A stretch of 64,000 nt of DNA from positions 186,001 through 250,000 of IMG/VR virus record IMGVR_UViG_3300030019_000003, one strand, 5' to 3'. The notes under the pieces are model-generated. The model made no database searches, was not told the origin of the DNA, and saw nothing but the letters and a program-made list of their open reading frames with translations. Both the position numbers and the translations under genes were made by a program. Of this stretch, positions 2,066 through 54,877 are shown piece by piece. Position 1 is the first letter of the stretch. Each line of letters begins with the position of its first letter.

Positions 2066-3103
2066 ATGTCTAACAAAATTGTAATTCATGCGTGCGGTGG
2101 TGCTGCCATCTCTGTTAGTAGTAAAGTTATCATGGCTAATCTTCCAGTAGGTTTTGGTTATGCTGAAGTAGATATTCACGCTGTTGATACTACTGATGCT
2201 GACTATAAAGATTCAAATCTTCTGAACCCATTATGGCTTATCAGTGGTGATTCACACTCTAAAGGTGTTATCAATGGTTCCGGTGGTGAAAGAGGTGAGA
2301 ACCTAAATGACATCAAAGCAGGTATTCCTAACTATCTTGATGACAAAGGTTTTAAACATCTTAAAGATGGCGAGTTTCATATTGTTATGTCAGCCCTTGG
2401 TGGTGGTTCTGGATCAGTTATAGGACCTATTATTTACAAAGGTCTTGCTGAGAGAAACATTCCTACGATCTATATCGGTATTGGCGATTCTAGAGATTTC
2501 CTACACGGTAATCACACCATCAACACTATCAAAACATTAGAGTCATTTGCTAAAAAAGCAGCTAAAGCATGCAGCTTTATTTATCTTAATAACACGACTG
2601 CTGATAAGGTGATGAATGTTGGTGAGGAAAAAGTCAATATGGAGATTAAAAATATCCTAACCGGGTTAACAATCTTCTTATCTGGTGAGAATCAGTCTTT
2701 GGATAATAAAGATATGATTAACCTCATGTGTATGGACGAGTATACCTCTATCGATATTCAACCAGGTATTTATGGTTTGAGTTTAGTGTCTAAAGTCCCT
2801 ACGCCACCAACAGGTTCTATCCCATTGGTAGCTAGGACATTGACGATTCCAAACATAAGTCCTGATCTTAACATTCAGACTTTCCATCACAAGTACGGCT
2901 ATGTTAAATCCCCAGAAATCATTGAGATCGTTGAAAAACAACTACCATTACATCTTATCAGCTATGGTAATGTTTTCGGTGCCATTACTCGTGAGATTAA
3001 CGAGATGGTATCAAAACAAAAAGAAGTGATCAGCTCTATCGTATATGATGGTGTTACTGGATCAGACAGCGCTACTGCAGACGATGACGGTATGTTTATT
3101 TAA
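2066..3103 (+). CDS. phuZ: Phage tubulin PhuZ (TubZ/FtsZ family; phiKZ gp39-like)
   Basis: ACGGAA N-terminal loop, GSGGERG, tubulin signature GGGSGS, acidic DDDGMFI C-terminal tail; AAGGA RBS. Confidence 0.92.
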   Translation: MSNKIVIHACGGAAISVSSKVIMANLPVGFGYAEVDIHAVDTTDADYKDSNLLNPLWLISGDSHSKGVINGSGGERGENLNDIKAGIPNYLDDKGFKHLKDGEFHIVMSALGGGSGSVIGPIIYKGLAERNIPTIYIGIGDSRDFLHGNHTINTIKTLESFAKKAAKACSFIYLNNTTADKVMNVGEEKVNMEIKNILTGLTIFLSGENQSLDNKDMINLMCMDEYTSIDIQPGIYGLSLVSKVPTPPTGSIPLVARTLTIPNISPDLNIQTFHHKYGYVKSPEIIEIVEKQLPLHLISYGNVFGAITREINEMVSKQKEVISSIVYDGVTGSDSATADDDGMFI

Positions 3104-3111
3104 TGTCAAAC

Positions 3112-3147
3112 TAACACTATAGAGAGGGAAGCCTCTCTATAGTGTTA
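3112..3147. terminator. 16-bp stem hairpin after phuZ
   Basis: TAACACTATAGAGAGG-gaag-CCTCTCTATAGTGTTA followed by a T-rich tract. Confidence 0.8.
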
Positions 3148-3198
3148 TGAATATTTTTTCTATTTCAGGTGTATATATGATAAGAGGGGGGAGTATCT

Positions 3199-3585: not shown

Positions 3586-3590
3586 TACCT

Positions 3591-5768: not shown

Positions 5769-5769
5769 A

Positions 5770-6273: not shown

Positions 6274-6283
6274 GGAGTATCCT

Positions 6284-6661: not shown

Positions 6662-6670
6662 GAGTGACAC

Positions 6671-7075: not shown

Positions 7076-7100
7076 ATCCTTTAAGGATCTACTCTGTTAC
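7064..7100. terminator. 18-bp-arm palindrome overlapping the stop codon
   Basis: GTAACAGAGTAGATCCTT-t-AAGGATCTACTCTGTTAC. Confidence 0.8.
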
Positions 7101-7174: not shown

Positions 7175-9373
7175 ATGGATTCTGAAGTAACAGATATTAA
7201 TAATCTATATAATGAAAAGTATGATCCGTATATATTTAAACGTGCCAATACGGCTTATGATATTCATCTTTCACCTGTAAGTGAGTATTTTAAACAAAGT
7301 ACCTCTTATATTAGTAAGATGACAGGTATGTCAGATGAGCTAGCTAATAAATGGGTTAAAAAAGCTTTAAAAACATTTAAATTAAAAAATCCAGAAGTAA
7401 CCTATAATGAGAAACAAGAAAATGGTGATATGGAAGTTAGTAGTTGTAAACTTACAGATTATATTAAAAATGTTTTAGCTTCAGGAGATGTTGTCGTACC
7501 CTCTTTTACAACATACATGCATCCTAGCAAAGAGAAAAGTCTACACGCTGACTTCTTGTCTATCAACATTGCTGCACGTAAATCTGATAAGAAGATGTCT
7601 CATAAGTTTGAACAAGCTTCAGAATCTGAAACAGCAACTCCTTCTGAAAAAGCTACTGCTAAAGATAAAGCATTATACTATGAGGTTATGCAGAAAACTC
7701 GTAAGGTTGCAAACAACTCATTATCAGGAGCATATGCTAGTAAATCATCTATCTTATTCAATCCATCAGCGCACTATACCTTAACCAGTATGACACGTTG
7801 TGTCGCTAGTATTGGTAATGCCATTACTGAATCTATGGTAGCAGGTAATAAGATGTTTAAAACACCCCAGGTAGTTTTAAATTATTTGGTTGCTATTGTA
7901 AGTAATATTAGTAAAGCTAAGGTTAACTATGCTTTACACAAATATAACTTACATGTTCCTACGCCAGAAGAGATTCTTAAAAGTATTAAACTAAGTTCTG
8001 ATAGGTATTGGCTTAACGCTGAGACAGATCAAGAGGTACTTGATTATTTAAATAAACTTGATGATGCTGAAAGAGCTGCTGTGCTCTATACTAACGATAT
8101 GTGGAATATGCGTAACTATAATGAAGATGTTGTGCGTATCCTAATAAGGCGAATGATTAAACGTGTTGAAAAAGGTTCCGTTAACCAACTTGATGATTTA
8201 TACCATTCACCTGAAGGTGTTACAACTACAGCTCACTTTATTTGTGCTAATGAAATCAAAGGTAAGAATATAGAATACGATAAGATGGTTGGATCAGAAT
8301 TATTAGAAACATTAGCCTCTACAACACGTAATATTTCTACGTGGTTGATATATTATAAACCTTTAATAGAAGCTTTCTTTACAACAGATATTTTACCATT
8401 GGATATTACCTATATTAGAGAGATGCTGCGTGATGTTATCGTGTTATCAGATACTGATAGTACATGTGGCTCTTACGATGAATGGGTACGTTGGTATTGT
8501 GGTGAGGATAACTTTGAAACGGTAGGGTCGTCTGTTGCGGCATGTGTTATGATGTTTAATACACAAGCTATGGATCATAACATTAAACAGTTTGCACGTA
8601 ATATGAATATTGATCCTGATAGGGTAGAACTTCTTAAGATGAAAAATGAATTCTATTGGCCAGTGTTTATTACGGCTAATAAGAATAAACATTATTTTGC
8701 TATGACCGCTGTTAAAGAAGGTAATGTTTTTGCTAAACCGAAACTAGAACGTAAAGGCGTCCATCTTATTGCTTCTGCTATTGATCAAGATCTTGTTAAA
8801 GTAAGTGAAGAGATGATGATAGAGGTCTCTAATAAGATTATTAAAAGAGAAGGTATTAATCTTTTTAGTTATGTTAAAAGAATAGCAGATATAGAAAGAG
8901 AGATTATACGTAAAATAGATAGCGGCGCTGTTAGTATGTATAAGCTTGAAAAAGTTAAGAATAAAGATAGCTACAAGAACGATGAAGACAAATCTCCTTA
9001 TATGCATCACATTGTATGGCGAGAGGTCTTTGCTGCCAAATATGGGTCAGCAGGTGATCCTATGTACATGGTTGTTAAAATACCTTTAAAAATAAAAGGT
9101 AAGAATGAATTGAAAGCATTTATGGAAAGTATCAAAGATACTGATATACGTGAACGTTGGTTGAAACTACTGGATGATTATGATAAAGATAGTATTGGTA
9201 CTTTTAAACCTCCTGTTATGATTGTGAATACACGTGGTATTCCTGAAGAAGTCAAAGCGGTTATTGATATTAAACGTATTGTTTTTGATAACTGTACCGT
9301 ATTCTATAACATCCTAGAGTCATTAGGCTTTTATAGAAAACCTAAGATGATGATTTGTGAGATGGGTTACTAG
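7175..9373 (+). CDS. Family B DNA polymerase, polymerase half of a split enzyme (phiKZ gp50-like)
   Basis: RKVANNSLSGAY (motif B-like KxxxNS) and LSDTDS (motif C); NKNKHY and KLERKG; no 3'-5' exonuclease motifs seen. Confidence 0.88.
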   Translation: MDSEVTDINNLYNEKYDPYIFKRANTAYDIHLSPVSEYFKQSTSYISKMTGMSDELANKWVKKALKTFKLKNPEVTYNEKQENGDMEVSSCKLTDYIKNVLASGDVVVPSFTTYMHPSKEKSLHADFLSINIAARKSDKKMSHKFEQASESETATPSEKATAKDKALYYEVMQKTRKVANNSLSGAYASKSSILFNPSAHYTLTSMTRCVASIGNAITESMVAGNKMFKTPQVVLNYLVAIVSNISKAKVNYALHKYNLHVPTPEEILKSIKLSSDRYWLNAETDQEVLDYLNKLDDAERAAVLYTNDMWNMRNYNEDVVRILIRRMIKRVEKGSVNQLDDLYHSPEGVTTTAHFICANEIKGKNIEYDKMVGSELLETLASTTRNISTWLIYYKPLIEAFFTTDILPLDITYIREMLRDVIVLSDTDSTCGSYDEWVRWYCGEDNFETVGSSVAACVMMFNTQAMDHNIKQFARNMNIDPDRVELLKMKNEFYWPVFITANKNKHYFAMTAVKEGNVFAKPKLERKGVHLIASAIDQDLVKVSEEMMIEVSNKIIKREGINLFSYVKRIADIEREIIRKIDSGAVSMYKLEKVKNKDSYKNDEDKSPYMHHIVWREVFAAKYGSAGDPMYMVVKIPLKIKGKNELKAFMESIKDTDIRERWLKLLDDYDKDSIGTFKPPVMIVNTRGIPEEVKAVIDIKRIVFDNCTVFYNILESLGFYRKPKMMICEMGY

Positions 9374-12897: not shown

Positions 12898-12923
12898 GAG
12901 AAGCGGATATCCGCTTCTCTTAC
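12894..12923. terminator. Perfect 30-bp palindrome holding the stops of both convergent genes
   Basis: GTAAGAGAAGCGGAT|ATCCGCTTCTCTTAC. Confidence 0.8.
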
Positions 12924-15727
12924 CATGATTTCATCAACTCTTCTAAACCTATTCTTCCGTACTGTATCGTTGGGGGTATCTCTTTATAATCCTCTGTCGA
13001 TACATTCATATCCGCCTCATTAATAATATCAACATCAGATGAGTAACCTGTTATCTTTTCCACTTCATCTTTAAAGAACGCGATAATATCAATATTACGA
13101 CTGTTAATATTAGGAACTTCTCCTGTATCTAATAGTGGTATATAAACATATGTTTGTTTATCTTGACCTCTACGCCACACACGGGCTATCGCTTGATCGT
13201 ATATGTACATCCTGAATGGGGTATCTAAGATGATAACAATATTAGCCGCTACAACAGGAACAGATTCACCTAGTGATTTGTAAGTCGCTATCAATGGGTT
13301 AACATTCTCATTCTCTGTAAATAACTTAACGGTTTGTGTTAAATGTTTAACATTTTCACCGTAGACACTAACAGGACTGTATCCCTCATTTCTTACATTT
13401 TTAAGAGCAGCATCACAAACATCTATATAGCTACTGAAAATAAGTGTTTTCTTTTCGGTAGATTCTATAATCTCTGTGAAATCAAAATGATACGCCATAT
13501 CCCTATGACATTCAATTCTAGCTTTACCTATAACCCCCGCTAACGCTTCACCCTGTACTTTTAAAGAAGGATATTTATAAATAGTTTTAGCCTCTTTAAA
13601 CAGTTTCTTTTCATCTCCCTGTAAAACAGGAAGCAAATACTTATTCTCAAAAACATTAGCATCTTTAATCGTTTGCGACATAAACATTAATTGTTTTCGT
13701 TTATAGCCATTTACGATATCTCTAATATTCTTTTCATAAGTATTAAAAAACTTAGGATCCACTTTATTTTTTAATTGTATCGCCTTAGCTTTCTCATAAA
13801 GTGACGTATAAAGTTTAGCATAGAGTTCTGCTTGCTTCTCAAGTTCTTCCATTCTCCTAGTTATAAATATTTTTAAATTAGTAGCTATAACTGGCAATGT
13901 GTAATCAACACCATTATCTAGTACCATGGGTATATTTCTAACAATAGGTTTTGGCCCAACATTATCTTTAGAAACTCTAACTGAGAAGTCCCCGTACCGC
14001 ATTCGTAATGTTTCTTTAAAAACATTACCAGGGTTCCTATATAATGCTAAGAAACGTTTTACAACAGCTCCTCTGAAGCGTAAGTCTAACATACTGATCA
14101 ATACTGCTAATTCAGCAACACCTGACTTAATAGGCGTTCCTGATAGTAATATAATATCTTCTGTATTTATAAGATCTAGTAACTTTAACAAAGCTACTGT
14201 TCTATTAGACTTAGCATCTAAGAAGTTATGTATTTCGTCTATGATGACAGTAATCTTCTTACCACTTATCTCTGGTAAAATATCAAAAAGTTTCTCTATT
14301 GACTCATAGTTACTTAAAATGAATTTTTCATTCTTATAACCTGTTTCATTCTTGACATTATAATAAGATTGTGGTTTCTTATAAATCTCTGTTGTCAATC
14401 CCTTTATCCAAACATTATCAACAGAGTTATTAGGAATAATACAGATAGCTACTTCAGTATTAACACATTCTGAAATAGCCAATGCTGTAAATGTATTATG
14501 GGTAGTAATGTAATTATCAACAACAAATAAATGATCTACATTATCTACTGCTATACAAGTAGCGTAATCAGATTTTGTTTTAACAATACTTTCTATGCCT
14601 AATAACATTTTTGTTTTAATAGGCTCAATAGTATTTATTAAATCCATATGGGCATTTGATGTAAAAAACTTATATGCTTCAGGGTGTTTAAACTTTAATA
14701 CACAAAGTCTTTTCTTGTTGTTTATCTTTGCTACTCCGCCAAGACTAAAAATGATAGACTGTAGATCTTTAACAAGAATTTCTGAATATGATGTGAATAT
14801 GAATTCACCTTCTTCGTTAACCGTGATATTTGCTTTATCAAAAATACCTTGCAATAAACTCCAGCGTTGTAATACACTACCATTCTTATACTCATTAGGT
14901 ATATACCAGTCTGTCGTTGCTAAGAAGTAAGGATCCTCTGGTAATGAAATAGAATCTATTTTCTCTGGGGTAATTAAGTCTATACTGGCTTTATTTCCAT
15001 TTATAGCTAGGAAATCAATAAGGTCCATTGTTGACATTATTTCATAATGACCTTGATTAACAAACGTATCCATTTCAGGATATATTTTCCATAAGTGATC
15101 ACCACAGGATACTATCTCACGACCATCTTCAAAACGTACAGTATATAAACATACGATACCTTGAGGATGTACCGAAAGTACTTTAGTAGGTTTACCGTCA
15201 TTACCTATAACTGTCTCACCTTTTATAAGACTGCCTATTGGCTTCCAACCGCCTGGTACTCTAACAGGTGTATCATCCCTTAAGGCTTTACCTGTACCAG
15301 TTCCCATATCAAAAAGTAACCCACGATAATGAAGTTTACTTTTATTTATCTCATATTTATCAAAAGCAGCCTGCTGATCTTCTAGTATCTTATAATGCAT
15401 TTTTTCATTAATAACCGATGTATCTAATGGTTCAACAGTATCATATTTTGATAGCTCTTTTATTTTAACAAGAAAAGCCCTTAAGGCTTTAATATTAACT
15501 CCGTACACGGAGTCACTGATAATAACATTCTCTAGGACATAAATAACTTCTGGAATAAAAAATCCATAGAAGCTAAAACCAATTAGTCCAAACTTAATAA
15601 ACAGAGCATCTATTTTTTGTATACCTAATTTACGTATAGATCTATTCCTAAAATTATTTCCGAAAAAACCTGTTACTGAGTATACATCATTTTTACTGTC
15701 ATAATTTATCATAACATTATTGAACAT
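12920..15727 (-). CDS. SNF2/DEAD-like superfamily 2 helicase containing an intein
   Basis: Walker A GTGTGK(intein)T, IIDEIH, LSGTP and motif VI QAIARVWRRGQ. Confidence 0.9.
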   Translation of the reverse strand: MFNNVMINYDSKNDVYSVTGFFGNNFRNRSIRKLGIQKIDALFIKFGLIGFSFYGFFIPEVIYVLENVIISDSVYGVNIKALRAFLVKIKELSKYDTVEPLDTSVINEKMHYKILEDQQAAFDKYEINKSKLHYRGLLFDMGTGTGKALRDDTPVRVPGGWKPIGSLIKGETVIGNDGKPTKVLSVHPQGIVCLYTVRFEDGREIVSCGDHLWKIYPEMDTFVNQGHYEIMSTMDLIDFLAINGNKASIDLITPEKIDSISLPEDPYFLATTDWYIPNEYKNGSVLQRWSLLQGIFDKANITVNEEGEFIFTSYSEILVKDLQSIIFSLGGVAKINNKKRLCVLKFKHPEAYKFFTSNAHMDLINTIEPIKTKMLLGIESIVKTKSDYATCIAVDNVDHLFVVDNYITTHNTFTALAISECVNTEVAICIIPNNSVDNVWIKGLTTEIYKKPQSYYNVKNETGYKNEKFILSNYESIEKLFDILPEISGKKITVIIDEIHNFLDAKSNRTVALLKLLDLINTEDIILLSGTPIKSGVAELAVLISMLDLRFRGAVVKRFLALYRNPGNVFKETLRMRYGDFSVRVSKDNVGPKPIVRNIPMVLDNGVDYTLPVIATNLKIFITRRMEELEKQAELYAKLYTSLYEKAKAIQLKNKVDPKFFNTYEKNIRDIVNGYKRKQLMFMSQTIKDANVFENKYLLPVLQGDEKKLFKEAKTIYKYPSLKVQGEALAGVIGKARIECHRDMAYHFDFTEIIESTEKKTLIFSSYIDVCDAALKNVRNEGYSPVSVYGENVKHLTQTVKLFTENENVNPLIATYKSLGESVPVVAANIVIILDTPFRMYIYDQAIARVWRRGQDKQTYVYIPLLDTGEVPNINSRNIDIIAFFKDEVEKITGYSSDVDIINEADMNVSTEDYKEIPPTIQYGRIGLEELMKSW
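14495..15286 (-). mobile_element. Class 3-type intein (264 aa) with degenerate LAGLIDADG domain
   Basis: Begins ALRDDTPV after GK; block B CGDHLW; block F ATCIAV; ends ITTHN with +1 Thr. Confidence 0.88.
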
Positions 15728-35145: not shown

Positions 35146-35443
35146 TCTTATAGCGTTCAGCATCGCTATTTTAACCATGCTTATAGGTTGTGGAGCAAAA
35201 CAACAACCGGATACTGTTTACTTAACTAACACTAAGAAGGTATACATTCCAGTATACTGTAACACTAGAGTTAAAGTAAAATGTGAATTTAATAATCCTG
35301 AGGATACTAAAGTAATTGATGGAATGTTGACATGTATCATAAGTCAAAAAGACGTCATATCGGCATGTAGTGAAGATAAACTACGTAAGCATGTCGATGA
35401 CCTTATAGCAAAAGATAAAGAAGATGATAATACTACTAAGTAG
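35132..35443 (+). CDS. Outer-membrane lipoprotein spanin (Rz1-like)
   Basis: Signal peptide with lipobox LIG-C; KVYIPVYC; additional Cys residues. Confidence 0.78.
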   Translation: MKIFNLIAFSIAILTMLIGCGAKQQPDTVYLTNTKKVYIPVYCNTRVKVKCEFNNPEDTKVIDGMLTCIISQKDVISACSEDKLRKHVDDLIAKDKEDDNTTK

Positions 35444-40584: not shown

Positions 40585-40605
40585 CCCATATGGGTTATCT
40601 CTTAC
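40574..40605. terminator. Perfect 32-bp palindrome encoding the C-termini of both convergent genes
   Basis: GTAAGAGATAACCCAT|ATGGGTTATCTCTTAC; both proteins end KR-stop. Confidence 0.82.
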
Positions 40606-43472: not shown

Positions 43473-45332
43473 ATGAATGGTAACAACAATGGAGCAGGGT
43501 TAACGTTTGATGAAAATGAGGGTACTGGAAATCCAGCAGTAGGTCAAAATGAGAATTTGCAGCAACCTAATGGATACGCGCCTTATCAAAATGAGGGTTC
43601 AACCACGTATGATAATGGATTCAATTTGTTTCAAAGTGGCTTCTTATCAACACAACCTGGCTCAGAACTTACTGCGAAATACTCTAAAGGTATTTTAGAG
43701 TTTATCGAAAAAATTAAAAGAACCGGTTTTAAAGTTAGCGAACTTGACAACGCTACGATTACAAATTTAAAATACAGTTCTATCATCATCTCTGCGGTCA
43801 ATGGACCAGAAGTACTTTATTACACATTGCTTATTGCCGCTACAGGTAAAGCTTCTCATAATGTTAAAGATTACTTCAATGTTCTTTCTGATGCAGAACG
43901 TATGAGTCTTAAAGATGCAGATGAAGCAGTGCGCTCATTGTACTTACCTTATATCGCATTTGATAATGACTATAAAGCAGCGATCGAAGCAAAACTTGAT
44001 GAAACTTATGGTACAAAATACAAATACGTTTCTCTTGATGGTTTCATCATTCATGAAGATGTTGTTGACAGTGAAGATCTATATCGTCATATGTTTGCAA
44101 AAGCGTTTAATGCGTTCCATGCTGAAACAAAAATGAGTGATGGTGTTGGCGATGCTACTATTGAAAACATTGCAAGATCTGCAAACTATCGTATCGCAAG
44201 TAACGGATGTAGAAACAGCGTTTCAGCATTGACTCCATTTGGTGCTGCTGTTAGAACTGACTGGCAGTTATCTTTGATTCCACAACCTCGTAAACAATCT
44301 TCTAACAGTATTCACACTGAAGGTGCTGTTGGACCTATCTTAACAGTTGGTGGTTTTGTAGATGCTATCCCTGAACAAACAATGATCCAAGAAGGCTTTG
44401 GTCAAATTGCAGGTATCCGTTATCACCCACATATTATCGTAACAAATGTTGCAAGTGCGTATGAAACAACGGGTATGGCTCTTCTTGCTATTACTGTTGG
44501 TGTAAGTATGGTTAAACCTGAAATGTATCTTGCGTCATTATCGCCAAGAGCTAAAAACAATCCAGGCGCATTGAATGTATTTGCTAACCTTGCTAACAAT
44601 CCAAATGGTGGTGAGTTCTTAGATATGACAACTGCAGCGTATACTCCTGATGCTATCATGGATTCATTGTCTAAAATGTTTACATTGGCTCCAGTGTTCT
44701 CTATTGATATTGAAACTTTTGGTCCTGATGCTTATACACTTTCTGCATTCACAAGTCTTACTAAAGAGAACCCAACAACATTCGCAGGTGCTGCAGCTTA
44801 CTTGGTTAACGTTGCGTCTAAACTTACAAAAGGCATGTTTCCTACTGAATATGACCTTAACAAAGTTATTGCTGGATTTACACGTGTCCCAACAGGTTCA
44901 TATATTGATCATGGTTCTAATGTACCATCTGATATTCGTGACTTTGATATGATCCGTGTTGTTAATGAGTCTGTTAACAATCCTAAATTGATTTACAAAT
45001 GGTACAACTCTAACACTAACCCAAATGGTTACAATGAAAAAGTTGAAGTTCTTGCAGCTATTAATCCAGGTGCTAAGATCACTGGTGAAGCAAGACGTGT
45101 TACGTTACATCCTGAGTTTATTGCAACACTTGTTAACGCAGTTTCTGCAAATAACCTTAGACCAAGTGCTACTCCTGAGGTTGAACTACAAACAACAAAT
45201 GGTTTCGTAGGTGGTGGTTTCTTTGCTACTGCTGGTGTTACCAATGTTGGTTTTGGTAACTTTGGTGGATTTGGTACAAATAGACCTGTAGGCTTTGGTA
45301 ACAACCAAGCTACATTTAGTAATCGTTTCTAA
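43473..45332 (+). CDS. chmA: Chimallin, phage nuclear shell protein (phiKZ gp54 / 201phi2-1 gp105-like)
   Basis: 619 aa; collinear motifs FGAAVRTD, PHIIVTNV, NPGALN, PVFSIDIETFG, SDIRDFD and TGEARRVTLHPEFI; lies upstream of the nvRNAP beta' gene. Confidence 0.9.
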   Translation: MNGNNNGAGLTFDENEGTGNPAVGQNENLQQPNGYAPYQNEGSTTYDNGFNLFQSGFLSTQPGSELTAKYSKGILEFIEKIKRTGFKVSELDNATITNLKYSSIIISAVNGPEVLYYTLLIAATGKASHNVKDYFNVLSDAERMSLKDADEAVRSLYLPYIAFDNDYKAAIEAKLDETYGTKYKYVSLDGFIIHEDVVDSEDLYRHMFAKAFNAFHAETKMSDGVGDATIENIARSANYRIASNGCRNSVSALTPFGAAVRTDWQLSLIPQPRKQSSNSIHTEGAVGPILTVGGFVDAIPEQTMIQEGFGQIAGIRYHPHIIVTNVASAYETTGMALLAITVGVSMVKPEMYLASLSPRAKNNPGALNVFANLANNPNGGEFLDMTTAAYTPDAIMDSLSKMFTLAPVFSIDIETFGPDAYTLSAFTSLTKENPTTFAGAAAYLVNVASKLTKGMFPTEYDLNKVIAGFTRVPTGSYIDHGSNVPSDIRDFDMIRVVNESVNNPKLIYKWYNSNTNPNGYNEKVEVLAAINPGAKITGEARRVTLHPEFIATLVNAVSANNLRPSATPEVELQTTNGFVGGGFFATAGVTNVGFGNFGGFGTNRPVGFGNNQATFSNRF

Positions 45333-45641: not shown

Positions 45642-46916
45642 ATGGCTATAACACAAACGCTTATACCTATAGATCAACTCTATCAACGTACAGGTGCCAA
45701 GATCATATTGAATAAGCTAAATGCCTTCAGTATGACTGATCAAGAAACCTTGTCTAAAAGTATCATGACTGTTTATGATAATGTTGACGTTATTTCTACG
45801 ATACCGCAATGTGATTGTGGCGCTATTAAAGGTAGGTACCTATTAGGAACACGTTGCCATACCTGCGGTACTGAGTGTAAAGAACTACATGAGAAAGTAG
45901 ATCCTATCCTATGGTTAGAAGCTATGGATAAAGGTTTACGATTCTTAAATCCAGGATTCTGGATGTTGATGTCCGAGATACTAGATTCTAAAAAACTGGT
46001 AGATTGGCTAAGATGGCTATGTGATCCAACCTATAGTAATGAAACACCTGTTCCACCACATATACAAGGAATTTATCTTGACGTCTTAAAAAGTAAACGT
46101 GAGTATAATAATACGATGTTACGCTTAAGAGATATCATGGTTTATATTCTTAATATACCAAGACCAACAGCAAAAGCAGATAGCTTATCTAAAGTATCTA
46201 TTATTAAACTAATAGAACTGTATGATCAGTATACAGCAGATGATATTTTATTCTCAACATATCTTCCGATTGTTAATAAGAAATTGTTTGTTATGGAAAA
46301 TACGGCTAAGGGTAAGTTTGTTAATCTTGTTGTATCTGAGATTCTTGATATCGTACTATCGTGGGTTAAAAGTTCTAATGCATTTGAGATTGATAGGAAT
46401 CTTAAAAAAGCAGGCATCATTACAGCTATGGCAGTATCGGAATTAAGTAAGTTCTTTTCAGAATTTACGGATAAGTATATCTTGAAAAAATCAGGATTGT
46501 TTCGTAAGCATGTATATGGTTCACGAGGTCACTTTACTTTCCGATGTGTTATCGTGTCAATATCAGGTCCGCATGATTATGACGAGATACACATACCTTG
46601 GGCTGTAGGTGTAACTGTTTTACGACCTATGCTTCTTAATAAGCTACGCCAACGCGGTGTAACCTATAAAGCAAGTCATAAGTTGCTTATGCAATCTGTT
46701 AAAAAGTTTGATCCGTTAATAAATGAGTTACTATTAGAGTTACTAGCAGAATCTCCATTAGGAAAACTACCAGTAATATCACAACGTAACCCATCACTAA
46801 CACAATCTAGTGCACTATTAACGTATATTACTAAAGTAAAGACGGATGTTGATGATAAGACTGTAGGTATTAGCAGCCTTGTTTGTAAACTACCTAATGC
46901 TGATTTTGATGGGGAT
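45642..46916 (+). CDS. Non-virion RNA polymerase beta' N-terminal subunit, exon 1 (phiKZ gp55-like)
   Basis: Zn motif CDCG...CHTC, KKSGLFRKHVYGSR, QRNPSL and catalytic NADFDGD; the ORF-track end at 46949 is read-through into the intron. Confidence 0.92.
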
Positions 46917-47400
46917 GAACATTTCGTCCCCCTAGGCATTGCTGCCTAGTAAAAAACCTCTCTAATTGCGGGAACCGACTTAAGACTATAGCTACTACTC
47001 GTACCTAGAAATAGAGTATGATACTTACGGAGTAATGTTTCCAGTAAGAAAAGTAAAAACGCTATAATATTGCGGAATCGACGCAGCGAAGCTTCTAAGT
47101 CCGATGAGGATATGAAGTAGGCTCAACGACTATCGAAACGACGCACTACAGTGTATGAGATGCCTATAGACGGTGTCGGTATAGGTAACTATACTCAACG
47201 GAGTAGAGTAGGGCCCAAGTGGGTGGGTATAGAATCCCTTAAATCGAAACGAGAGGAATTTGTAATTTTTAATTACAAGTTATGATATAGTCTATGCGAC
47301 TTATAAGTCTTTCCTAGTTTACAAACTAGGTCATCGTGTAAAACACACGAGCCGCATGTAAAGATGCGAGTATATTTAACGAATATGCTAAATATTTTAA
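46917..47400 (+). ncRNA. Group I self-splicing intron (IA-like), no internal ORF
   Basis: P1 with U.G pair (GGGGAU/GUCCCC); P AAUUGCGGGA; Q AAUCGACGCAGC; R CUCAACGACUAU; S GAUAUAGUC; P3 CCUCUC/GAGAGG; P8 hairpin; P10 AUUUC/GAAAU. Confidence 0.92.
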
Positions 47401-47634
47401 GAAATTAATTTTACGTTAATTTTAGATACTTATCTACATGAGTTAGCTAAAACGTTCGCACCACATCACAATGTATTTGATGGTGCTAAACCTTATAGTA
47501 TCAATGGGTTTATTACATTATTAACACCTGCTAATGCTTTGTTATCAGACGCGCTAGATGATGATGAAGAAAGACCACTAGAAGACACTATTTATGACAA
47601 GTTAAAGTTTGTAAAAGTAGGTGTTAATAAATAA
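47401..47634 (+). CDS. nvRNAP beta' exon 2 (77 aa; absent from the ORF track)
   Basis: Reads EINFTLILDTYLHELAKTFAPHHNVF...VGVNK-stop, continuing NADFDGD in frame; the spliced product is 502 aa. Confidence 0.88.
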   Translation, partial: EINFTLILDTYLHELAKTFAPHHNVFDGAKPYSINGFITLLTPANALLSDALDDDEERPLEDTIYDKLKFVKVGVNK

Positions 47635-48411: not shown

Positions 48412-49161
48412 ATGAAAAAGCTTATATTATTGTTAATGGTACTCGTTGTATCGTTATTCGCAAAACCATTAAAACCAGAGAGTGTTCTTGCTAAAGAACT
48501 TACCAAACTAGATAAGGGTCAGCAAGAATTACTATTTAAATCTTACATTTATGCTGAACAAAATGGATACGGGTATACATTAACAGCTGTGGCTTGGAAA
48601 GAAAGTAACTTTGGTAAGATAGTTGCTAATCCAAAAGAGGGAAAGTACGGAACGTACGGACCATATCAATCTAAAGTAGAAGATGTCCTAGCAAGGAACC
48701 ATTTAAAGCCTACTAAAGATAATATCGCTAAGGTGAGAGAGCAATTATTGCACGATCTTAAATTCGCGGCTAATGATGCCATAATCGAATTAAAAGCATG
48801 GGATCATTCACATGCTAAAAAGAAAAAGGTAAATGTATATCGCAGTACACTAGCAGCTTATAATGCAGGTACGGCAGCGGAGAAATCTAGCTTAGGAAAA
48901 GGATACGCTGAAGATATCGTACATCGATTACCAATCGTTAAAAAGTACATAATGAGTAAGCCTGAACTTTTAGCATCTTATAAAGAACATGCAAAGACAA
49001 TAGATAGATTGTCATCTTTTATAAAAGTTTCAGATCCTAAGGATATACGAATTATCTTATCTTGTACTACGTTTGACTTAAAACCGCTAGGTGCTACTTA
49101 TCTTAGTACTGTCACAGCGCGGGAGTTAATACCTAGTTTAGCAAAAGACGAATTAGTTTAA
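48412..49161 (+). CDS. Lytic transglycosylase (SLT/lysozyme-like) with signal peptide; candidate endolysin
   Basis: MKKLILLLMVLVVSLFA signal; AVAWKESNFG (catalytic Glu), GPYQ and LAAYNAG. Confidence 0.85.
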   Translation: MKKLILLLMVLVVSLFAKPLKPESVLAKELTKLDKGQQELLFKSYIYAEQNGYGYTLTAVAWKESNFGKIVANPKEGKYGTYGPYQSKVEDVLARNHLKPTKDNIAKVREQLLHDLKFAANDAIIELKAWDHSHAKKKKVNVYRSTLAAYNAGTAAEKSSLGKGYAEDIVHRLPIVKKYIMSKPELLASYKEHAKTIDRLSSFIKVSDPKDIRIILSCTTFDLKPLGATYLSTVTARELIPSLAKDELV

Positions 49162-50305: not shown

Positions 50306-50355
50306 TTTATTAACACGTGTATCACTCCAGTCAACACCTAAGATATGGGGTTTAC

Positions 50356-51885: not shown

Positions 51886-51894
51886 AGTAATTCC

Positions 51895-52617
51895 TTAATG
51901 GTTAATTTTATCAATAATTGTTTTAGCGGCTAAGCTTATGTTCTTAATTTCTTCAGCGTATTTAGGATCGGCACCTACAGCAGGTATAACATCCAGTGCT
52001 ATCGCAGAGTATATCTCACCAATGGTTTGTCTAACCGTAACATAGCGTAGACCAAGACTACTGTAAGTCATGAAGTCTTCATCGGAATAGTTAATGGTAC
52101 CTTGTTTAAAACTGAAGATAGGCAAGAAAGGGTTGAGTACATGACCCACGCCATCAGGAATAAGTTTACTATCTGCAAAGATAGAAAAGCTATCATAATT
52201 AGTAATAGCTGCAGTATTCAAAGCAGTTGTTAAACGCTCGTTAAAAAGTGTATTGTATTGCTCAGGATTATTAACAATCTTAGCAGGTGTGCTCATACCA
52301 TTAAAAATAATAACAGTATCTGAAAATAGACCAGGGTATTCTCTAAGAACACTGTCTCTGATAGTATGTAAGTTAACACCGTGTTCAGCTCCTGTAGTAA
52401 GAATAATACTAGCAGCTTGATTTAAGCTAACAGTAGCTCCGTTAAATACTTCTTTAAGAGAGATGTCGCGTTCAATAACTGGAGCTAGTAATCGCTTACT
52501 CTCCTCAACATTATAATAGGCGTTGTTTAATTCCTTAATAACGGCTAGGAATTCTTCTCTCATAGTTTCCCAACTTAGAACTTCTTGTTTTTTAGGGAGT
52601 TGTTTCTTAGTGCTCAT
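51895..52617 (-). CDS. Hypothetical protein
   Basis: AAGGA RBS; 240 aa. Confidence 0.65.
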   Translation of the reverse strand: MSTKKQLPKKQEVLSWETMREEFLAVIKELNNAYYNVEESKRLLAPVIERDISLKEVFNGATVSLNQAASIILTTGAEHGVNLHTIRDSVLREYPGLFSDTVIIFNGMSTPAKIVNNPEQYNTLFNERLTTALNTAAITNYDSFSIFADSKLIPDGVGHVLNPFLPIFSFKQGTINYSDEDFMTYSSLGLRYVTVRQTIGEIYSAIALDVIPAVGADPKYAEEIKNISLAAKTIIDKINH

Positions 52618-52712
52618 GCTTCATCCTTAATGTGTGATTATCATAGATACCAATGGATACAAATAATTAATCGCCCAGAGATTAACTGAAATTATCAAAA
52701 AGGACATGCCTG

Positions 52713-53615
52713 ATGATGAACTATGAAATACAAGATTATCTTGACAGTTATTTAAGAGAGGCTTTAATTGCTAATAAATATGTTATGTATCGCCGTCTTT
52801 TTAATTTGTTGTTTAATCTCAACACTACGATCAAAAATAATAATCATATCGAGCTTGATGATCTTCAGGGTGAAATGATTGATACTATTACCGTATACGA
52901 AGACGATACGGACTCTGTTAATTTACATCTTGAGGTGGTGTTTACAAAAGCCATGAAAACTTATATTGGTAGATACGGCATTATTATAAGCGATGATGCA
53001 ACTTTATCAGATTATGAAGCGATACTATTAGGATATTATAACCTGATAAATCCTGATCCTAACATGATAGAATATATACAGATGCAGTTAGAGGATATAG
53101 AGTATGAAGATAACCTATTAAAACTTGCTAGTATCTTAAGTATGAATTCTACTAAATCAGTTACATCAGTATATGAAGTACTGGATGATGTTAGAGAGGA
53201 TATTTTTATACTACTAGCAACTTACTTCAGTAACATGCTAGATGTTAATGGTGAACCACTTACGGATAATACTATCGATATTGTGTTAGCTTTAACAAAA
53301 GCTGATCCAGGTTTTAATAATACCTTTATATTAAAAGATGTTATTATTAATGGTTACCGTGCTGTTGGTATTGACATGCTGTTAACAGATCTTTACAGTA
53401 ATATTAATAAGCATACTAATGATTACAATCTTATACCCTATGAGATCGTTGCGACGCTATACATAGCAAATGATACTAAGGATGACATGTTGTCAGGATA
53501 CTTAGAAAAATTTAATATGGAAGCATTAGTGTTCATGCAGAATGAAAGTGGTAAAGAAGTTATTAATGCTGCCGTAGAAATGTTAATAAATAAGATATAT
53601 GCGAGTCTAACATGA
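52713..53615 (+). CDS. Conserved phiKZ-like protein upstream of vRNAP beta' (gp79-like by synteny)
   Basis: Acidic helical 300-aa ORF, ATGA-type overlap with the next gene. Confidence 0.6.
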   Translation: MMNYEIQDYLDSYLREALIANKYVMYRRLFNLLFNLNTTIKNNNHIELDDLQGEMIDTITVYEDDTDSVNLHLEVVFTKAMKTYIGRYGIIISDDATLSDYEAILLGYYNLINPDPNMIEYIQMQLEDIEYEDNLLKLASILSMNSTKSVTSVYEVLDDVREDIFILLATYFSNMLDVNGEPLTDNTIDIVLALTKADPGFNNTFILKDVIINGYRAVGIDMLLTDLYSNINKHTNDYNLIPYEIVATLYIANDTKDDMLSGYLEKFNMEALVFMQNESGKEVINAAVEMLINKIYASLT

Positions 53616-54877
53616 AAGCAACTGAATACTTTTTAAAAATGATACAAACAGATCATGTCTTTAAACTTAAATGGTATTATTCTGTTTTTGCACTTATAAG
53701 TAAGAATGCGACTGCTAATGAGTACCTTAAGATAGAAGAAGACAGTTACTACGTTCTTATAGAAAAAGAATGGATTAAGATAGATGATAGACTTCCTGTT
53801 GATGGCGCGTTATTAAGTATGATGGAACCTATCGTTTTAGAAAAAGATAGTTTAGAGAATGTACATGAGCGTTTAGAAACAACAATCGGTCTAACAGTTA
53901 TGAATGTTCTTTACTTCACATCTATCTTTGGTACTATGTTTAATTTTCAAAATAAAGCTATGACACCTAAAAGTGTTGAGAATATGGTCATCACCGCCTA
54001 TAAAAAAGATGCTATAACGGTAGAACAATATCACAGCTTTATGGATGTTGGTACCTTCTTAGAAGGTCTTGCAAGAATCATAACCGTATCAATTACGCCT
54101 AAGACCATTGTTCCTCCCCCTGGTATTAAGGAATACTCTATAAAAGTGCGAGAAGAGATGGTTGCCAAGTATGGTACTAACTGGGTAAAAGATAGATCTA
54201 GAATTGTTGAGTATGAAGAGGCTCTTAAGAAGTATGATAAGGCTTGGCTAAAAGATGATCCTTCTTTAGGTAAACTTATGTCTGGTAAGATACTTAATGA
54301 TGCCAGGGTTAAAATGAATTTAGGATTTGGGGCAGAGTCTGCGTTTGATGAAACAGGTACCGATGTTAATCTTATTACTAACTCATTACTAGACGGTTAT
54401 CCGAAGGATGCTGCTTCATTAGCTGTTATTTTTAACACTTCAAGAGCAGGGTCATTCTTTAGGGGCCATGAGACACAGAAAGGCGGTGCCAGTGCTAAAG
54501 ACCTACTAAGAGCTACTGCTGGTATCGTTATTGTTCCTGGCGATTGTAACACCCGCCTAGGCCATCCTGTGACGGTTGGTAAATGGATGGGAGATAATCT
54601 TACAGGTAGATATATTATAGAAGGTGACAAAGTTTCTAAAATAGAAAACATGTTTGATTATATAGGTAAGACTATTGTTATTAGATCTCCACAATATTGT
54701 AATCAGGCTAATGGTATTTGTTCTATATGTTCAGGTGAGGTTATGGCTAAATATCCTAACGGTGTATCTATTTTAGCCACAGATATTTCAGGAGCTATGT
54801 TAAATAGTTCGTTAAAGAAAATGCATGCTTCAAAGTCAACAACTATGAAGTTTAATATAAAAGAAACTATCCGCTAA
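53612..54877 (+). CDS. Virion RNA polymerase beta' C-terminal subunit (phiKZ gp80-like)
   Basis: SRAGSFFRGHETQKGG (bridge helix-like), DCNT, IRSPQYC, CSICSG and LKKMH. Confidence 0.88.
   Translation: MKATEYFLKMIQTDHVFKLKWYYSVFALISKNATANEYLKIEEDSYYVLIEKEWIKIDDRLPVDGALLSMMEPIVLEKDSLENVHERLETTIGLTVMNVLYFTSIFGTMFNFQNKAMTPKSVENMVITAYKKDAITVEQYHSFMDVGTFLEGLARIITVSITPKTIVPPPGIKEYSIKVREEMVAKYGTNWVKDRSRIVEYEEALKKYDKAWLKDDPSLGKLMSGKILNDARVKMNLGFGAESAFDETGTDVNLITNSLLDGYPKDAASLAVIFNTSRAGSFFRGHETQKGGASAKDLLRATAGIVIVPGDCNTRLGHPVTVGKWMGDNLTGRYIIEGDKVSKIENMFDYIGKTIVIRSPQYCNQANGICSICSGEVMAKYPNGVSILATDISGAMLNSSLKKMHASKSTTMKFNIKETIR

What the first reader, a model, noticed from the sequence alone, without database searches (positions are those of the whole stretch)
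2066..54877. Complete nucleus-forming toolkit in an AT-rich phage with a possible Campylobacterota host
Seen: ChmA, PhuZ, vRNAP and nvRNAP subunits, and a phiKZ-type protease, sheath and tube. The best-characterised nucleus-forming phages infect Gammaproteobacteria. The Campylobacter-type dimeric dUTPase, the low GC and a spanin pair (diderm host) suggest an epsilonproteobacterial host such as Sulfurimonas, Sulfurovum or Arcobacter. The host assignment is inference only.
Basis: partly seen in the sequence, partly recalled or inferred. Interest (0 to 1): 0.7.

Follow-up and report, generated by a model that had tools for sequence, protein, structure and literature searches.

The report
Peat chimallivirus, host still unproven
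The window belongs to a complete 252-kb genome of an uncultured, deeply divergent nucleus-forming jumbo phage from peat; the nucleus-forming genes are all there, but the proposed Campylobacterota host is a plausible lead and not an established fact.

Summary
Observation confirmed. The window is bases 186001-250000 of a complete 252,159-bp IMG/VR phage genome (34.1% GC) found in many peat metagenomes. It encodes ChmA (Pfam hit above cut-off, profile hit to solved chimallins at E 1e-42, predicted fold matching only chimallin), PhuZ, vRNAP and nvRNAP subunits, and a phiKZ-type protease, sheath and tube. It also encodes a two-component spanin and a Campylobacter-type dimeric dUTPase. Across the whole genome, all 4 vRNAP and all 5 nvRNAP subunits and a PicA/Imp1 (gp69) homologue are present. 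It is a deep-branching member of Chimalliviridae; identity to cultured relatives is at most about 30% for vRNAP and 22-25% for ChmA.

The host claim is only partly supported.
- Low GC says nothing: phiKZ itself is 36.8% GC.
- Spanins show only a diderm host.
- The dUTPase family is almost exclusively Campylobacterota among cellular genomes, but the phage copy sits on a very long branch outside every host genus. It is also syntenic in a related phage contig, so it is an old gene, not a recent capture.
- RecJ, MYG1, Tmk, the Vs.1-like 'SLT' and the tRNA give no Campylobacterota signal.
- A new independent hint: a fibre N-terminal domain matches only Nitratiruptor phages and prophage-like genes in Campylobacterota genomes.

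My estimate for a Campylobacterota host is about 0.4.

The parts
3..656 (+). 3' end of the vRNAP gp180-like subunit gene. The ORF starts upstream at genome position 184524 and encodes 710 aa, with a C-terminal extension of about 220 aa.
   Evidence: tblastn to phiKZ gp180: 34% identity, E 6e-73. phrog_2986 end positions 488-537/539.
656..1078 (+). HNH endonuclease
   Evidence: phrog_59 at 6.5e-21 and phrog_959. Weak hit to phiKZ gp56.
2066..3103 (+). PhuZ, phage tubulin
   Evidence: phrog_4733 at 1.1e-39. PDB PhuZ hits 3R4V, 3J5V, 3ZBP and 9PM9. GGGSGS nucleotide-binding loop and acidic C-terminal tail aligned with phiKZ gp39.
7175..9373 (+). Divergent family B DNA polymerase (phiKZ gp50 homologue)
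   Evidence: Pfam divDNApol at 5e-179. 30% identity to gp50.
12920..15727 (-). SNF2/DEAD-type helicase (phiKZ gp203 homologue)
   Evidence: Pfam Helicase_C, SNF2-rel_dom and ResIII. 33% identity to gp203.
15798..20117 (+). Virion RNA polymerase large subunit (phiKZ gp178 homologue)
   Evidence: phrog_3148 at 1063 bits over full length. 31% identity to gp178, E 1e-135. Best cultured relatives are 25-30% identical.
21690..22418 (+). Virion structural protein (phiKZ gp176 homologue)
   Evidence: phrog_2926 at 1e-57. 30% identity to gp176.
22432..23223 (+). Head maturation protease (phiKZ gp175 homologue)
   Evidence: phrog_3014 at 1e-57. 35% identity to gp175.
23288..25465 (+). phiKZ gp182 homologue; function unknown, structural-like
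   Evidence: phrog_3181 at 2.5e-151. 32% identity to gp182.
29729..30613 (-). Tail tube (phiKZ gp30 homologue)
   Evidence: phrog_3185 at 5e-64. 31% identity to gp30. The syntenic gene in L089 carries Pfam Phage_TTP_14.
30624..32822 (-). Tail sheath (phiKZ gp29 homologue)
   Evidence: Pfam phiKZ_gp29PR at 1.3e-11. Full-length tblastn to gp29, E 1e-34.
34732..35145 (+). i-spanin (Rz-like): N-terminal transmembrane helix followed by a coiled coil
   Evidence: Transmembrane helix at residues 11-29 and a heptad-rich remainder. phrog_739 'Rz-like spanin' at 7e-5.
35132..35443 (+). o-spanin (Rz1-like outer-membrane lipoprotein); overlaps the i-spanin gene by 14 nt
   Evidence: Signal peptide with lipobox L-I-G-C20. 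Two small ORFs lie at the same place in the relative contig L089. No family hit.
35479..36450 (-). Dimeric (all-alpha) dUTPase, Campylobacter-type, with N-terminal and internal extensions (323 aa against about 225)
   Evidence: Pfam dUTPase_2 at 9e-20. PDB 1W2Y at 1.4e-31. Genome hits and tree.
38122..40584 (+). SbcC/SMC-like ATPase (phiKZ gp165 homologue)
   Evidence: Pfam SMC_N. phrog_77 at 1.8e-52. 26% identity to gp165.
40595..41689 (-). phiKZ gp52 homologue (virion protein)
   Evidence: phrog_3938 at 1.8e-58. 27% identity to gp52.
43473..45332 (+). Chimallin (ChmA), the nuclear shell protein
   Evidence: Pfam PF25677 at 33.7 bits, cut-off 27. 482 homologues in an exhaustive search, the best 37% identical. 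Profile against PDB chimallins, E 1e-42. AF2 model pLDDT 79.8, with top PDB folds all chimallin.
45642..46916 (+). nvRNAP beta'-N subunit (phiKZ gp55 homologue), exon 1, ending at the catalytic NADFDGD motif. The exon end is approximate; the ORF reads on to a stop at 46949.
   Evidence: phrog_2987 positions 3-426/478 at 3e-100. Pfam RNA_pol_Rpb1_2. 27% identity to gp55. Sequence shown.
46907..47400 (+). Group I self-splicing intron without an ORF. The Rfam core spans 46907-47317; the 3' end is inferred from where the exon 2 frame opens.
   Evidence: Rfam RF00028 at 56.6 bits, gathering score 50, E 1e-11. Stops in the exon 2 frame up to 47400.
47401..47631 (+). nvRNAP beta'-N subunit, exon 2 (about 77 aa)
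   Evidence: phrog_2987 positions 424-465/478. tblastn to phiKZ 50558-50758, which is PHIKZ056.1 behind HNH gp56.
48412..49161 (+). Secreted T4 Vs.1-like protein, annotated in some phages as 'lytic murein transglycosylase F-like'.
   Evidence: Signal peptide. phrog_600 at 6.5e-28. 566 phage records at about 30-33% identity. No Pfam or PDB hit.
53612..54877 (+). vRNAP subunit (phiKZ gp80 homologue)
   Evidence: phrog_2962 at 3e-92. 29% identity to gp80.
54931..55761 (+). DprA-like recombination mediator
   Evidence: phrog_768 at 5.8e-16.
57321..58118 (+). MYG1/UPF0160-family protein
   Evidence: Pfam MYG1_exonuc at 5e-16, N-terminal part only. Atlas neighbours are all PF03690, with taxa Bacteroidota and Uroviricota.
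60687..62495 (+). RecJ-like ssDNA exonuclease
   Evidence: phrog_2484 at 3e-63. Genome comparisons.

Best explanation
The window is the right-hand quarter of a complete genome of an uncultured jumbo phage of the family Chimalliviridae (252 kb, 34% GC), recovered from peat metagenomes.

By homology with phiKZ, 201phi2-1 and Goslar it should replicate as follows. This cycle is inferred, not observed.
1. A four-subunit virion RNA polymerase (homologues of gp178, gp180, gp149 and gp80) is injected with the DNA and transcribes early genes.
2. ChmA polymerises into a protein shell around the phage DNA.
3. A five-subunit non-virion RNA polymerase (homologues of gp55, gp68, gp71/73, gp74 and gp123) transcribes later genes inside the shell.
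4. A gp69/PicA-like protein helps import proteins into the shell.
5. PhuZ filaments position or rotate the shell.
6. Capsids matured by the gp175-like protease are filled at the shell and joined to contractile tails (sheath and tube).
7. Lysis of a two-membrane host is completed by an Rz/Rz1-type spanin pair.

The gp55-like subunit must be spliced from two exons around a group I intron placed at its catalytic NADFDGD motif.

The host is a diderm bacterium that uses Shine-Dalgarno initiation. Campylobacterota (Sulfurimonadaceae-like or relatives) is the best single candidate, at about 0.4, but it is not established. The dUTPase is a long-resident phage gene of Campylobacter-type ancestry, not a recent capture.
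For: Genome context: (252,159 bp, terminal repeat, CheckV 100%, 34.1% GC). (24 runs listed, 23 labelled peat and 1 wastewater).

Toolkit:
- family hits.
- 56 ORFs with phiKZ homologues, including all vRNAP and nvRNAP subunits, gp69, MCP, terminase and protease.
- ChmA sequence, profile and fold.
- PhuZ.
- The ChmA gene is followed directly by the RNAP subunit gene, as reported for 631 of 650 chimallins in bioRxiv 10.1101/2025.02.27.640493.
- Intron.

Diderm host. Shine-Dalgarno use: AAGGA-like motif at -11 to -7 in 65% of ORFs against 7% of control positions.

Leads towards Campylobacterota:
- dUTPase family distribution.
- Weaker cultured-phage homologues of the dUTPase.
- A fibre N-terminal domain found only in Nitratiruptor phages among 50,697 phage records.
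- The same domain in 3 of 401 Campylobacterota genomes (84 and 53 bits for the two best) against 1 of 401 Pseudomonadota genomes (27 bits).
Against: - No infection has been seen, so nucleus formation is inferred from homology only.
- ChmA is only 22-25% identical to studied chimallins.
- The dUTPase does not nest in any host genus, and it is syntenic in a related phage contig.
- RecJ is closer to Pseudomonadota.
- MYG1, Tmk, the SSF transporter and the Vs.1-like protein give other or mixed taxa.
- The tRNA-Met has no close copy in 201 Campylobacterota genomes.
- No chimallin was found in 401 Campylobacterota genomes, but none was found in 271 Pseudomonadota controls either.
- No contig of the one Sulfurimonas MAG I tested appeared in four phage-positive runs.
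- All cultured chimalliviruses found here infect Pseudomonadota.
- The fibre domain lies in the N-terminal part of the proteins, not the receptor-binding end. The G037 hit belongs to an NrS-like prophage, so it is not independent of the phage hits.
Confidence: 0.85

Rival explanations
1. The host is a member of Campylobacterota (for example freshwater Sulfurimonadaceae). The dUTPase and the fibre domain would be traces of a long association with that phylum and its phages.
For: - 78 of the 80 best genome hits of the dUTPase are Campylobacterota.
- The top PDB hit is the Campylobacter-type enzyme 1W2Y.
- The fibre N-terminal domain hits only Nitratiruptor phages NrS-2 and NrS-3 in INPHARED: 43% identity over 100 aa, E 1e-10.
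- The same domain hits a Sulfurimonas-like genome (84 bits) and a Nitratiruptor-like genome (53 bits). The best hit in 401 Pseudomonadota genomes is 27 bits.
- The Shine-Dalgarno motif AAGGA and the diderm lysis genes are compatible.
Against: - The dUTPase lies on a 2.79-long branch outside every genus clade and is old in the phage lineage.
- RecJ, MYG1, Tmk, the SSF transporter and the Vs.1-like protein show no Campylobacterota affinity.
- There is no tRNA match.
- There is no sign of the tested Sulfurimonas MAG in phage-positive runs.
- Peat is not a typical Campylobacterota habitat (general knowledge).
- No known chimallivirus infects this phylum.
Confidence: 0.4
2. The host is a member of Pseudomonadota (Gamma- or Betaproteobacteria), like all cultured chimalliviruses. 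The low GC would then be a family trait, as in phiKZ.
For: - Every cultured phage with a ChmA or vRNAP match infects Pseudomonadota, apart from chimallin-less Staphylococcus RNAP relatives.
- phiKZ is 36.8% GC.
- The best RecJ hits are in Pseudomonadota at 201-209 bits.
- The Vs.1-like protein is shared with 566 phages of Gammaproteobacteria.
- Two Gammaproteobacteria MAGs also carry this dUTPase type.
Against: - The phage database is dominated by Pseudomonadota phages, so the Vs.1 and ChmA tallies are biased.
- The RecJ difference is small and may reflect phage-like copies.
- The fibre domain and the dUTPase family point elsewhere.
Confidence: 0.33
3. The host is another diderm, Shine-Dalgarno-using lineage common in anoxic peat or wastewater, such as Spirochaetota, Desulfobacterota, Negativicutes or Fusobacteriota.
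For: - The source is peat.
- Atlas neighbours of Tmk, MYG1 and RecJ include Spirochaetota, Synergistota and Bacteroidota.
- The best cellular hits of the SSF transporter are Bacillota and Planctomycetota.
- Only two phyla could be sampled with the genome search.
Against: - No specific positive signal points to any of these phyla.
- Bacteroidota is disfavoured by the strong Shine-Dalgarno usage, given the general knowledge that Bacteroidota largely lack this motif.
Confidence: 0.25
4. The phage carries the genes but does not build a closed nucleus; for example, ChmA has another role in this lineage.
For: ChmA is only 22-25% identical to studied chimallins. Nothing has been observed in cells.
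Against: - Full-length chimallin fold with disordered N- and C-terminal tails.
- Complete vRNAP and nvRNAP sets, a gp69/PicA homologue and conserved gene order.
Confidence: 0.05

Closest known systems
Pseudomonas phage phiKZ and other cultured Chimalliviridae (201phi2-1, phiPA3, Goslar, RAY, Xanthomonas RTH11/LucasX, Burkholderia FLC9)
   Same: - ChmA, PhuZ, four-subunit vRNAP, five-subunit nvRNAP and gp69/PicA.
- gp175-type protease, gp29 sheath, gp30 tube, gp120 capsid protein and gp25 terminase.
- ChmA gene followed directly by the gp55 gene.
- Introns in RNAP genes.
- Low GC (phiKZ 36.8%).

   Different: - Only 22-35% protein identity; 56 ORFs are detectably shared with phiKZ.
- gp71 and gp73 are fused into one ORF.
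- Carries genes for which no phiKZ homologue was detected: a dimeric dUTPase, MYG1, a Na+/solute symporter and an array of RCC1-type fibres.
- Comes from peat; host unknown.
Metagenomic chimallin- and PhuZ-encoding phages surveyed in BMC Genomics 2025 (PMC12625630) and the 650 chimallins of the Huge Phage Genome Collection (bioRxiv 10.1101/2025.02.27.640493)
   Same: An uncultured jumbo phage from IMG/VR-type data with ChmA and PhuZ. Its GC lies inside the reported 27-59% range, and ChmA sits next to an RNAP subunit gene.
   Different: [quoted passage not shown] I could not check whether this genome is in their set, because no supplements are held.
Campylobacter jejuni dimeric dUTPase (PDB 1W2Y) and its Campylobacterota orthologues
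   Same: Pfam dUTPase_2. All motif columns conserved in alignment A1 are present. Best PDB and best cellular matches.
   Different: 30-37% identity. About 100 extra residues (N-terminal extension and an insert). A very long branch outside the host clades. The gene is fixed next to the spanin and tail genes in the phage lineage.
Tail fibre of Nitratiruptor phages NrS-2 and NrS-3 (temperate phages of deep-sea Campylobacterota)
   Same: A domain of about 100-150 aa (NrS-3 residues 116-262) is shared with six paralogous fibre-like proteins of this phage at 32-43% identity.
   Different: The distal parts differ: SBBP beta-propeller and Big_9 in NrS, against RCC1-like propellers or an F5/8 type C domain here. 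The virion type and genome size are also different.
Lambda Rz/Rz1-type two-component spanins
   Same: A type II membrane protein with a coiled coil, plus a small lipoprotein with a lipobox, encoded side by side.
   Different: The genes overlap by only 14 nt (overlapped or separated architecture, not embedded). The o-spanin has no family hit.

Membership tests
Chimalliviridae (nucleus-forming jumbo phages) | Encodes chimallin (ChmA) | tested here: met
   Pfam PF25677 above the gathering score. Profile against solved chimallins, E 1e-42 to 4e-37, full length. AF2 model: the nine top PDB hits are all chimallin at TM 0.63-0.78, with nothing else significant.
Chimalliviridae (nucleus-forming jumbo phages) | Two multisubunit RNA polymerases (virion and non-virion) | tested here: met
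   Homologues of gp178, gp180, gp149 and gp80, and of gp55, gp68, gp71/73, gp74 and gp123, found by tblastn against phiKZ. PHROG RNAP families.
Chimalliviridae (nucleus-forming jumbo phages) | Shared core genome: 72 core genes in conserved blocks (Prichard et al. 2023, PMC10299810) | tested here: inconclusive
   56 ORFs have phiKZ homologues at E<1e-3, including capsid protein, terminase, protease, gp69, helicases and polymerases, and local gene order is kept. The published list of 72 core and 21 unique genes was not available gene by gene.
Chimalliviridae (nucleus-forming jumbo phages) | PhuZ tubulin (accessory; present in about 66% of members) | tested here: met
Chimalliviridae (nucleus-forming jumbo phages) | Phage DNA enclosed in a protein shell during infection | not testable with these tools
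   Needs an infected host, or microscopy or cryo-ET.
Phage of a Campylobacterota host | Host-derived genes nest inside host clades in trees | tested here: not met
   The dUTPase tree places the phage plus P0040 outside all Campylobacterota genera, on an end branch of 2.79. RecJ is not closest to Campylobacterota.
Phage of a Campylobacterota host | Shares genes or domains with phages or prophages of that host group | tested here: met
   The fibre N-terminal domain is found only in Nitratiruptor phages among 50,697 records and in 3 of 401 Campylobacterota genomes. This is weak evidence: one domain, in the N-terminal part of the proteins.
Phage of a Campylobacterota host | CRISPR spacer matches from host genomes | not tested
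Phage of a Campylobacterota host | Phage tRNA nearly identical to a host tRNA | tested here: not met
   No match at E<=1e-10 in 201 Campylobacterota genomes.
Phage of a Campylobacterota host | Co-occurrence with the host in the source samples | tested here: inconclusive
   Only 35-65-nt fragments of one Sulfurimonas MAG locus were found in four phage-positive runs. One species was tested, and contigs show presence, not absence.
Two-component spanin (Rz/Rz1 type) | i-spanin with an N-terminal transmembrane helix and a periplasmic coiled coil; o-spanin with a lipoprotein signal; adjacent genes | tested here: met
   Transmembrane helix at residues 11-29. Lipobox LIGC with Cys20. Genes overlap by 14 nt. 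phrog_739 Rz-like at 7e-5.
Dimeric dUTPase (Pfam dUTPase_2, all-alpha NTP pyrophosphatase) | Family profile match above cut-off, with the family's conserved motifs present | tested here: met
   72 bits against a cut-off of 22.9. 47 invariant columns shared with 30 homologues. PDB 1W2Y at 1.4e-31.
Group I intron | Covariance-model match above the Rfam gathering score, plus flanking exons that restore one protein | tested here: met
   RF00028 at 56.6 bits against 50. Exon 1 and exon 2 match consecutive positions of phrog_2987. Splicing itself has not been observed.

The most novel reading that the evidence does not exclude
This is the first recognised lineage of nucleus-forming phages that infects Campylobacterota, that is, outside Pseudomonadota. 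It lives in peat and wetland sulfur-cycling communities. It carries an anciently captured Campylobacter-type dUTPase and an array of fibres whose N-terminal domain is shared with temperate Campylobacterota phages.
Probability: 0.38. Interest if true: 0.6.

Novelty: new member of a known kind. Interest (0 to 1): 0.42.

Why it matters
Nucleus-forming phages are studied almost only in Gamma- and Betaproteobacteria. This is a complete genome that keeps the whole toolkit at 22-35% identity. It shows which parts are indispensable: ChmA, both RNA polymerases, a gp69/PicA homologue and PhuZ. It also gives a very distant ChmA and PhuZ for structural and evolutionary comparison.

If the Campylobacterota lead is right, the phage nucleus would be shown to work in a second bacterial phylum, with different cell biology and defence repertoires. 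It would also point to isolation hosts (Sulfurimonas, Sulfuricurvum).

If the lead is wrong, the case is a useful warning. GC content and a single 'host-type' enzyme do not predict hosts for this family.

Tried and rejected
- Pattern searches in IMG/VR for ChmA relatives found nothing.
- The ChmA alignments were too divergent for pattern search.
- The word-based protein search found only ChmA itself. The exhaustive search was needed.
- Cluster look-up of dUTPase hits gave no names.
- Contexts of outlying dUTPases: P0027 is bacterial and P0044 sits on a 1-kb contig, so neither was informative.
- The contigs of the closest ChmA and SSF relatives are too short to help.
- The genome search cannot draw relatives for a virus or take taxon names. 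Only Campylobacterota and Pseudomonadota could be sampled, so other phyla were not tested.
- The tRNA-Met search was negative.
- The 16S genes needed for a co-occurrence test are missing from the three MAGs I tried.
- Laying four runs on one Sulfurimonas locus gave only short motif-level fragments.
- Chimallin was not found in 401 Campylobacterota genomes, nor in 271 Pseudomonadota genomes, so the negative is uninformative.
- No supplementary tables are held for PMC12625630.
- I rejected the idea that low GC indicates a low-GC host.
- I rejected Bacteroidota as host, because of the strong Shine-Dalgarno signal.
- I rejected the reading of 48412-49161 as a Pfam SLT-domain protein.

Full report
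WHAT THE WINDOW IS

The window is bases 186001-250000 of a single 252,159-bp IMG/VR virus record. The record has a 127-bp terminal repeat and a CheckV completeness of 100%. It is 34.1% GC and carries one tRNA-Met gene. The same sequence is held by 24 listed public runs, 23 labelled peat metagenome and one wastewater. A 100% identical copy of the vRNAP gene lies on a second IMG/VR contig of 150,674 bp. This is a real, recurrent and complete phage genome, not a chimeric bin.

THE OBSERVATION

- ChmA is at 43473-45332. It passes Pfam's chimallin cut-off (33.7 bits against 27). An exhaustive HMMER search found 482 cluster representatives, the best 37% identical and most 25-33% identical over the full length.
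- A profile of 38 of these sequences hits the solved chimallins of phiPA3, 201phi2-1 and Goslar at E 1e-42 to 4e-37.
- An AlphaFold model (pLDDT 79.8, pTM 0.80) has disordered N- and C-terminal tails. Its nine best PDB matches are all chimallin (TM 0.63-0.78), and nothing else is significant.
- PhuZ (2066-3103) matches the PhuZ PHROG at 1e-39 and the solved PhuZ structures. It keeps the GGGSGS loop and an acidic C-terminal tail.

A local tblastn of 261 ORFs against phiKZ, fetched with its annotation, found 56 homologues. In the window these include:
- gp178 (15798-20117)
- gp80 (53612-54877)
- the 3' end of gp180 (3-656)
- gp55 (45642-46949)
- the gp175 protease (22432-23223; also phrog_3014 at 1e-57)
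- gp176, gp182 and gp52
- sheath gp29 and tube gp30
- polymerase gp50, helicase gp203 and SbcC-like gp165

Outside the window lie gp149, gp68, a fused gp71/73, gp74, gp123, gp69 (PicA/Imp1), the capsid protein and the terminase. The toolkit is therefore complete, but only over the whole genome.

The nearest cultured phages are 25-30% identical in the large vRNAP subunit and 22-25% in ChmA. All of them infect Pseudomonadota.

LYSIS AND TRANSLATION SIGNALS

Two adjacent genes form a classical two-component spanin.
- 34732-35145 encodes a 137-aa protein with one N-terminal transmembrane helix and a coiled-coil remainder. It has a weak Rz-like PHROG hit.
- 35132-35443 encodes a 103-aa protein with a lipobox (LIGC, Cys20).

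This supports a diderm host. An AAGGA-like Shine-Dalgarno motif sits at -11 to -7 of 65% of ORFs, against 7% of control positions. The host therefore uses Shine-Dalgarno initiation, which argues against Bacteroidota (general knowledge). It does not separate Campylobacterota from Pseudomonadota and many other phyla.

THE HOST ARGUMENT, PIECE BY PIECE

1. GC content. phiKZ, recomputed from the fetched record, is 36.8% GC, although its Pseudomonas host is GC-rich (general knowledge). The published survey of chimallin phages reports 27-59% GC. Low GC is not unusual in this family and does not predict the host.

2. The dUTPase.
- It is a dimeric dUTPase_2 enzyme.
- Its best solved relative is 1W2Y, which from general knowledge is the Campylobacter jejuni enzyme.
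- In one genome per GTDB species, 78 of its 80 best matches are Campylobacterota, at 29-37% identity.
- Only six cultured phages have weaker homologues. 'Campylobacter-type' is therefore correct.
- In a tree of 140 sequences the Campylobacterota enzymes follow taxonomy. Sulfurimonas and Campylobacter each form one clade, at 99% support.
- The phage protein sits on a branch of 2.79 substitutions per site outside all of them, next to the metagenomic protein P0040.
- The contig of P0040 shows the same gene order: tube, sheath, a 600-aa gene, two small ORFs, dUTPase.
- The gene has therefore been resident in this phage lineage for a long time. It may record an old link with Campylobacterota, but it is not a recent host capture.

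- RecJ finds 163 bits at best in 151 Campylobacterota genomes and 201-209 bits in 151 Pseudomonadota genomes.
- Atlas neighbours of MYG1, Tmk and RecJ are Bacteroidota, Uroviricota, Spirochaetota, Pseudomonadota and Synergistota.
- The Pfam SLT domain exists only in the tail lysin outside the window.
- The secreted protein at 48412-49161 is a T4 Vs.1-like protein shared with 566 phages of Gammaproteobacteria.

4. The tRNA-Met has no close copy in 201 Campylobacterota genomes.

5. A new lead.
- The genome region 44.8-77.6 kb encodes six to eight paralogous fibre-like proteins. They carry RCC1-like beta-propellers or an F5/8 type C domain.
- Their shared N-terminal domain matches only the tail fibres of Nitratiruptor phages NrS-2 and NrS-3 among 50,697 phage records (43% identity over about 100 aa, E 1e-10).
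- The domain hits 3 of 401 Campylobacterota genomes. The best hit is 84 bits, in a genome whose dUTPase is 72% identical to those of Sulfurimonas MAGs. The second is 53 bits, in a Nitratiruptor/Hydrogenimonas-like genome.
- Against this, 1 of 401 Pseudomonadota genomes gave a hit, at 27 bits.
- The second hit has the NrS fibre architecture, so it is not independent of the phage hits.
- The domain is in the N-terminal part of the proteins, not the receptor-binding end. This is evidence of a shared gene pool, not proof of a shared host.

6. Negative checks of little weight.
- No chimallin was found in 401 Campylobacterota genomes, but none was found in 271 Pseudomonadota genomes either.
- Four phage-positive runs hold only motif-length fragments of one Sulfurimonas MAG locus.

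Weighing a strong prior for Pseudomonadota against two independent but weak Campylobacterota signals, I put the Campylobacterota host at about 0.4, Pseudomonadota at about 0.33 and other diderms at about 0.25.

HOW IT MOST LIKELY WORKS

This is inferred by homology with phiKZ-like phages. The virion RNA polymerase is injected and transcribes early genes. ChmA assembles the shell around the DNA. The non-virion polymerase works inside the shell. A gp69/PicA-like factor imports proteins. PhuZ positions the shell. Capsids processed by the gp175-like protease dock and are filled. Contractile tails are added. The spanins complete lysis of a two-membrane cell. None of these steps has been observed for this phage.

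SIDE FINDINGS

- The gp55-like nvRNAP gene is interrupted by an ORF-less group I intron immediately after its catalytic NADFDGD motif (Rfam 56.6 bits, window 46907-47317).
- A 77-aa second exon (about 47401-47631) continues the PHROG profile exactly where exon 1 stops. It matches phiKZ ORF 56.1, which lies behind the HNH gene gp56.
- A second group I intron splits the terminase gene.
- The phage also encodes an 11-helix Na+/solute symporter family protein next to a methyltransferase and a radical-SAM-like gene. This is unusual cargo for a phage.

COMPARISON AND NOVELTY

By every sequence and fold test available, this is a member of Chimalliviridae. Nucleus formation itself cannot be tested here.

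Metagenomic surveys have already listed more than a thousand chimallin-encoding genomes from many environments, spanning 27-59% GC (PMC12625630). A second collection holds 650 chimallins that usually lie next to an RNAP subunit gene. An AT-rich, uncultured chimallivirus is therefore a new member of a known kind.

I found no paper that links nucleus-forming phages to Campylobacterota hosts. If the host lead were confirmed it would be new. At present it is a hypothesis with modest support.

Noticed in passing
window 46907-47631 (with exon 1 at 45642-46916): An ORF-less group I intron splits the nvRNAP gp55-like gene right after the catalytic NADFDGD motif. A 77-aa exon 2 follows. phiKZ seems to have the same split, with HNH gp56 inside it and ORF 56.1 as exon 2.
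   Followed up: yes
genome 133634-136217 (L102:13634-16217), minus strand: The terminase large subunit is split into two ORFs by a second group I intron (Rfam 52.2 bits at genome 135070-135455). A further terminase-N-like ORF lies at genome 121161-122243.
   Followed up: partly
genome 52693-56721 (L097:7693-11721): The phage encodes a sodium:solute symporter family protein (426 aa, 11 predicted transmembrane helices) next to a methyltransferase and a radical-SAM-like gene. Relatives at 44-67% identity sit on short metagenomic contigs; cellular hits reach at most 38%.
   Followed up: partly
genome 44821-77620 (L096-L098): An array of six to eight paralogous fibre-like proteins (532-1399 aa) with a shared N-terminal domain. 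Their distal parts are RCC1-like beta-propellers or an F5/8 type C lectin-like domain, which suggests several receptor-binding proteins.
   Followed up: partly
genome 90023-91843 (L099:15023-16843): A 606-aa ORF with a weak Hint (intein or homing-endonuclease-associated) match. This may be an intein-containing gene.
   Followed up: no
window 3-1078: The gp180-like vRNAP subunit carries a C-terminal extension of about 220 aa that is absent from phiKZ gp180. It is followed directly by an HNH endonuclease gene.
   Followed up: no
genome 145315-147579: phiKZ encodes nvRNAP subunit gp71/73 as two ORFs around HNH gp72. Here it is a single 754-aa ORF.
   Followed up: no
window 48412-49161: A secreted T4 Vs.1-like protein (phrog_600) shared with 566 phages of Gammaproteobacteria. 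No Pfam or PDB sequence match; function unknown.
   Followed up: partly
window 57321-58118: A MYG1/UPF0160-family protein. Atlas neighbours show this family is common in phages and Bacteroidota-labelled bins. Its role in a phage is unknown.
   Followed up: partly
L122 (IMGVR_UViG_3300031521_000014): A 150,674-bp IMG/VR contig carries a 100% identical copy of the vRNAP large-subunit gene, so the same phage was assembled from another sample.
   Followed up: no
L089 (Logan DRR680742 contig, 12.4 kb): A related phage fragment with the same tube-sheath-600aa-spanin-dUTPase order. It is the nearest relative of the dUTPase, but its sample type could not be looked up.
   Followed up: partly
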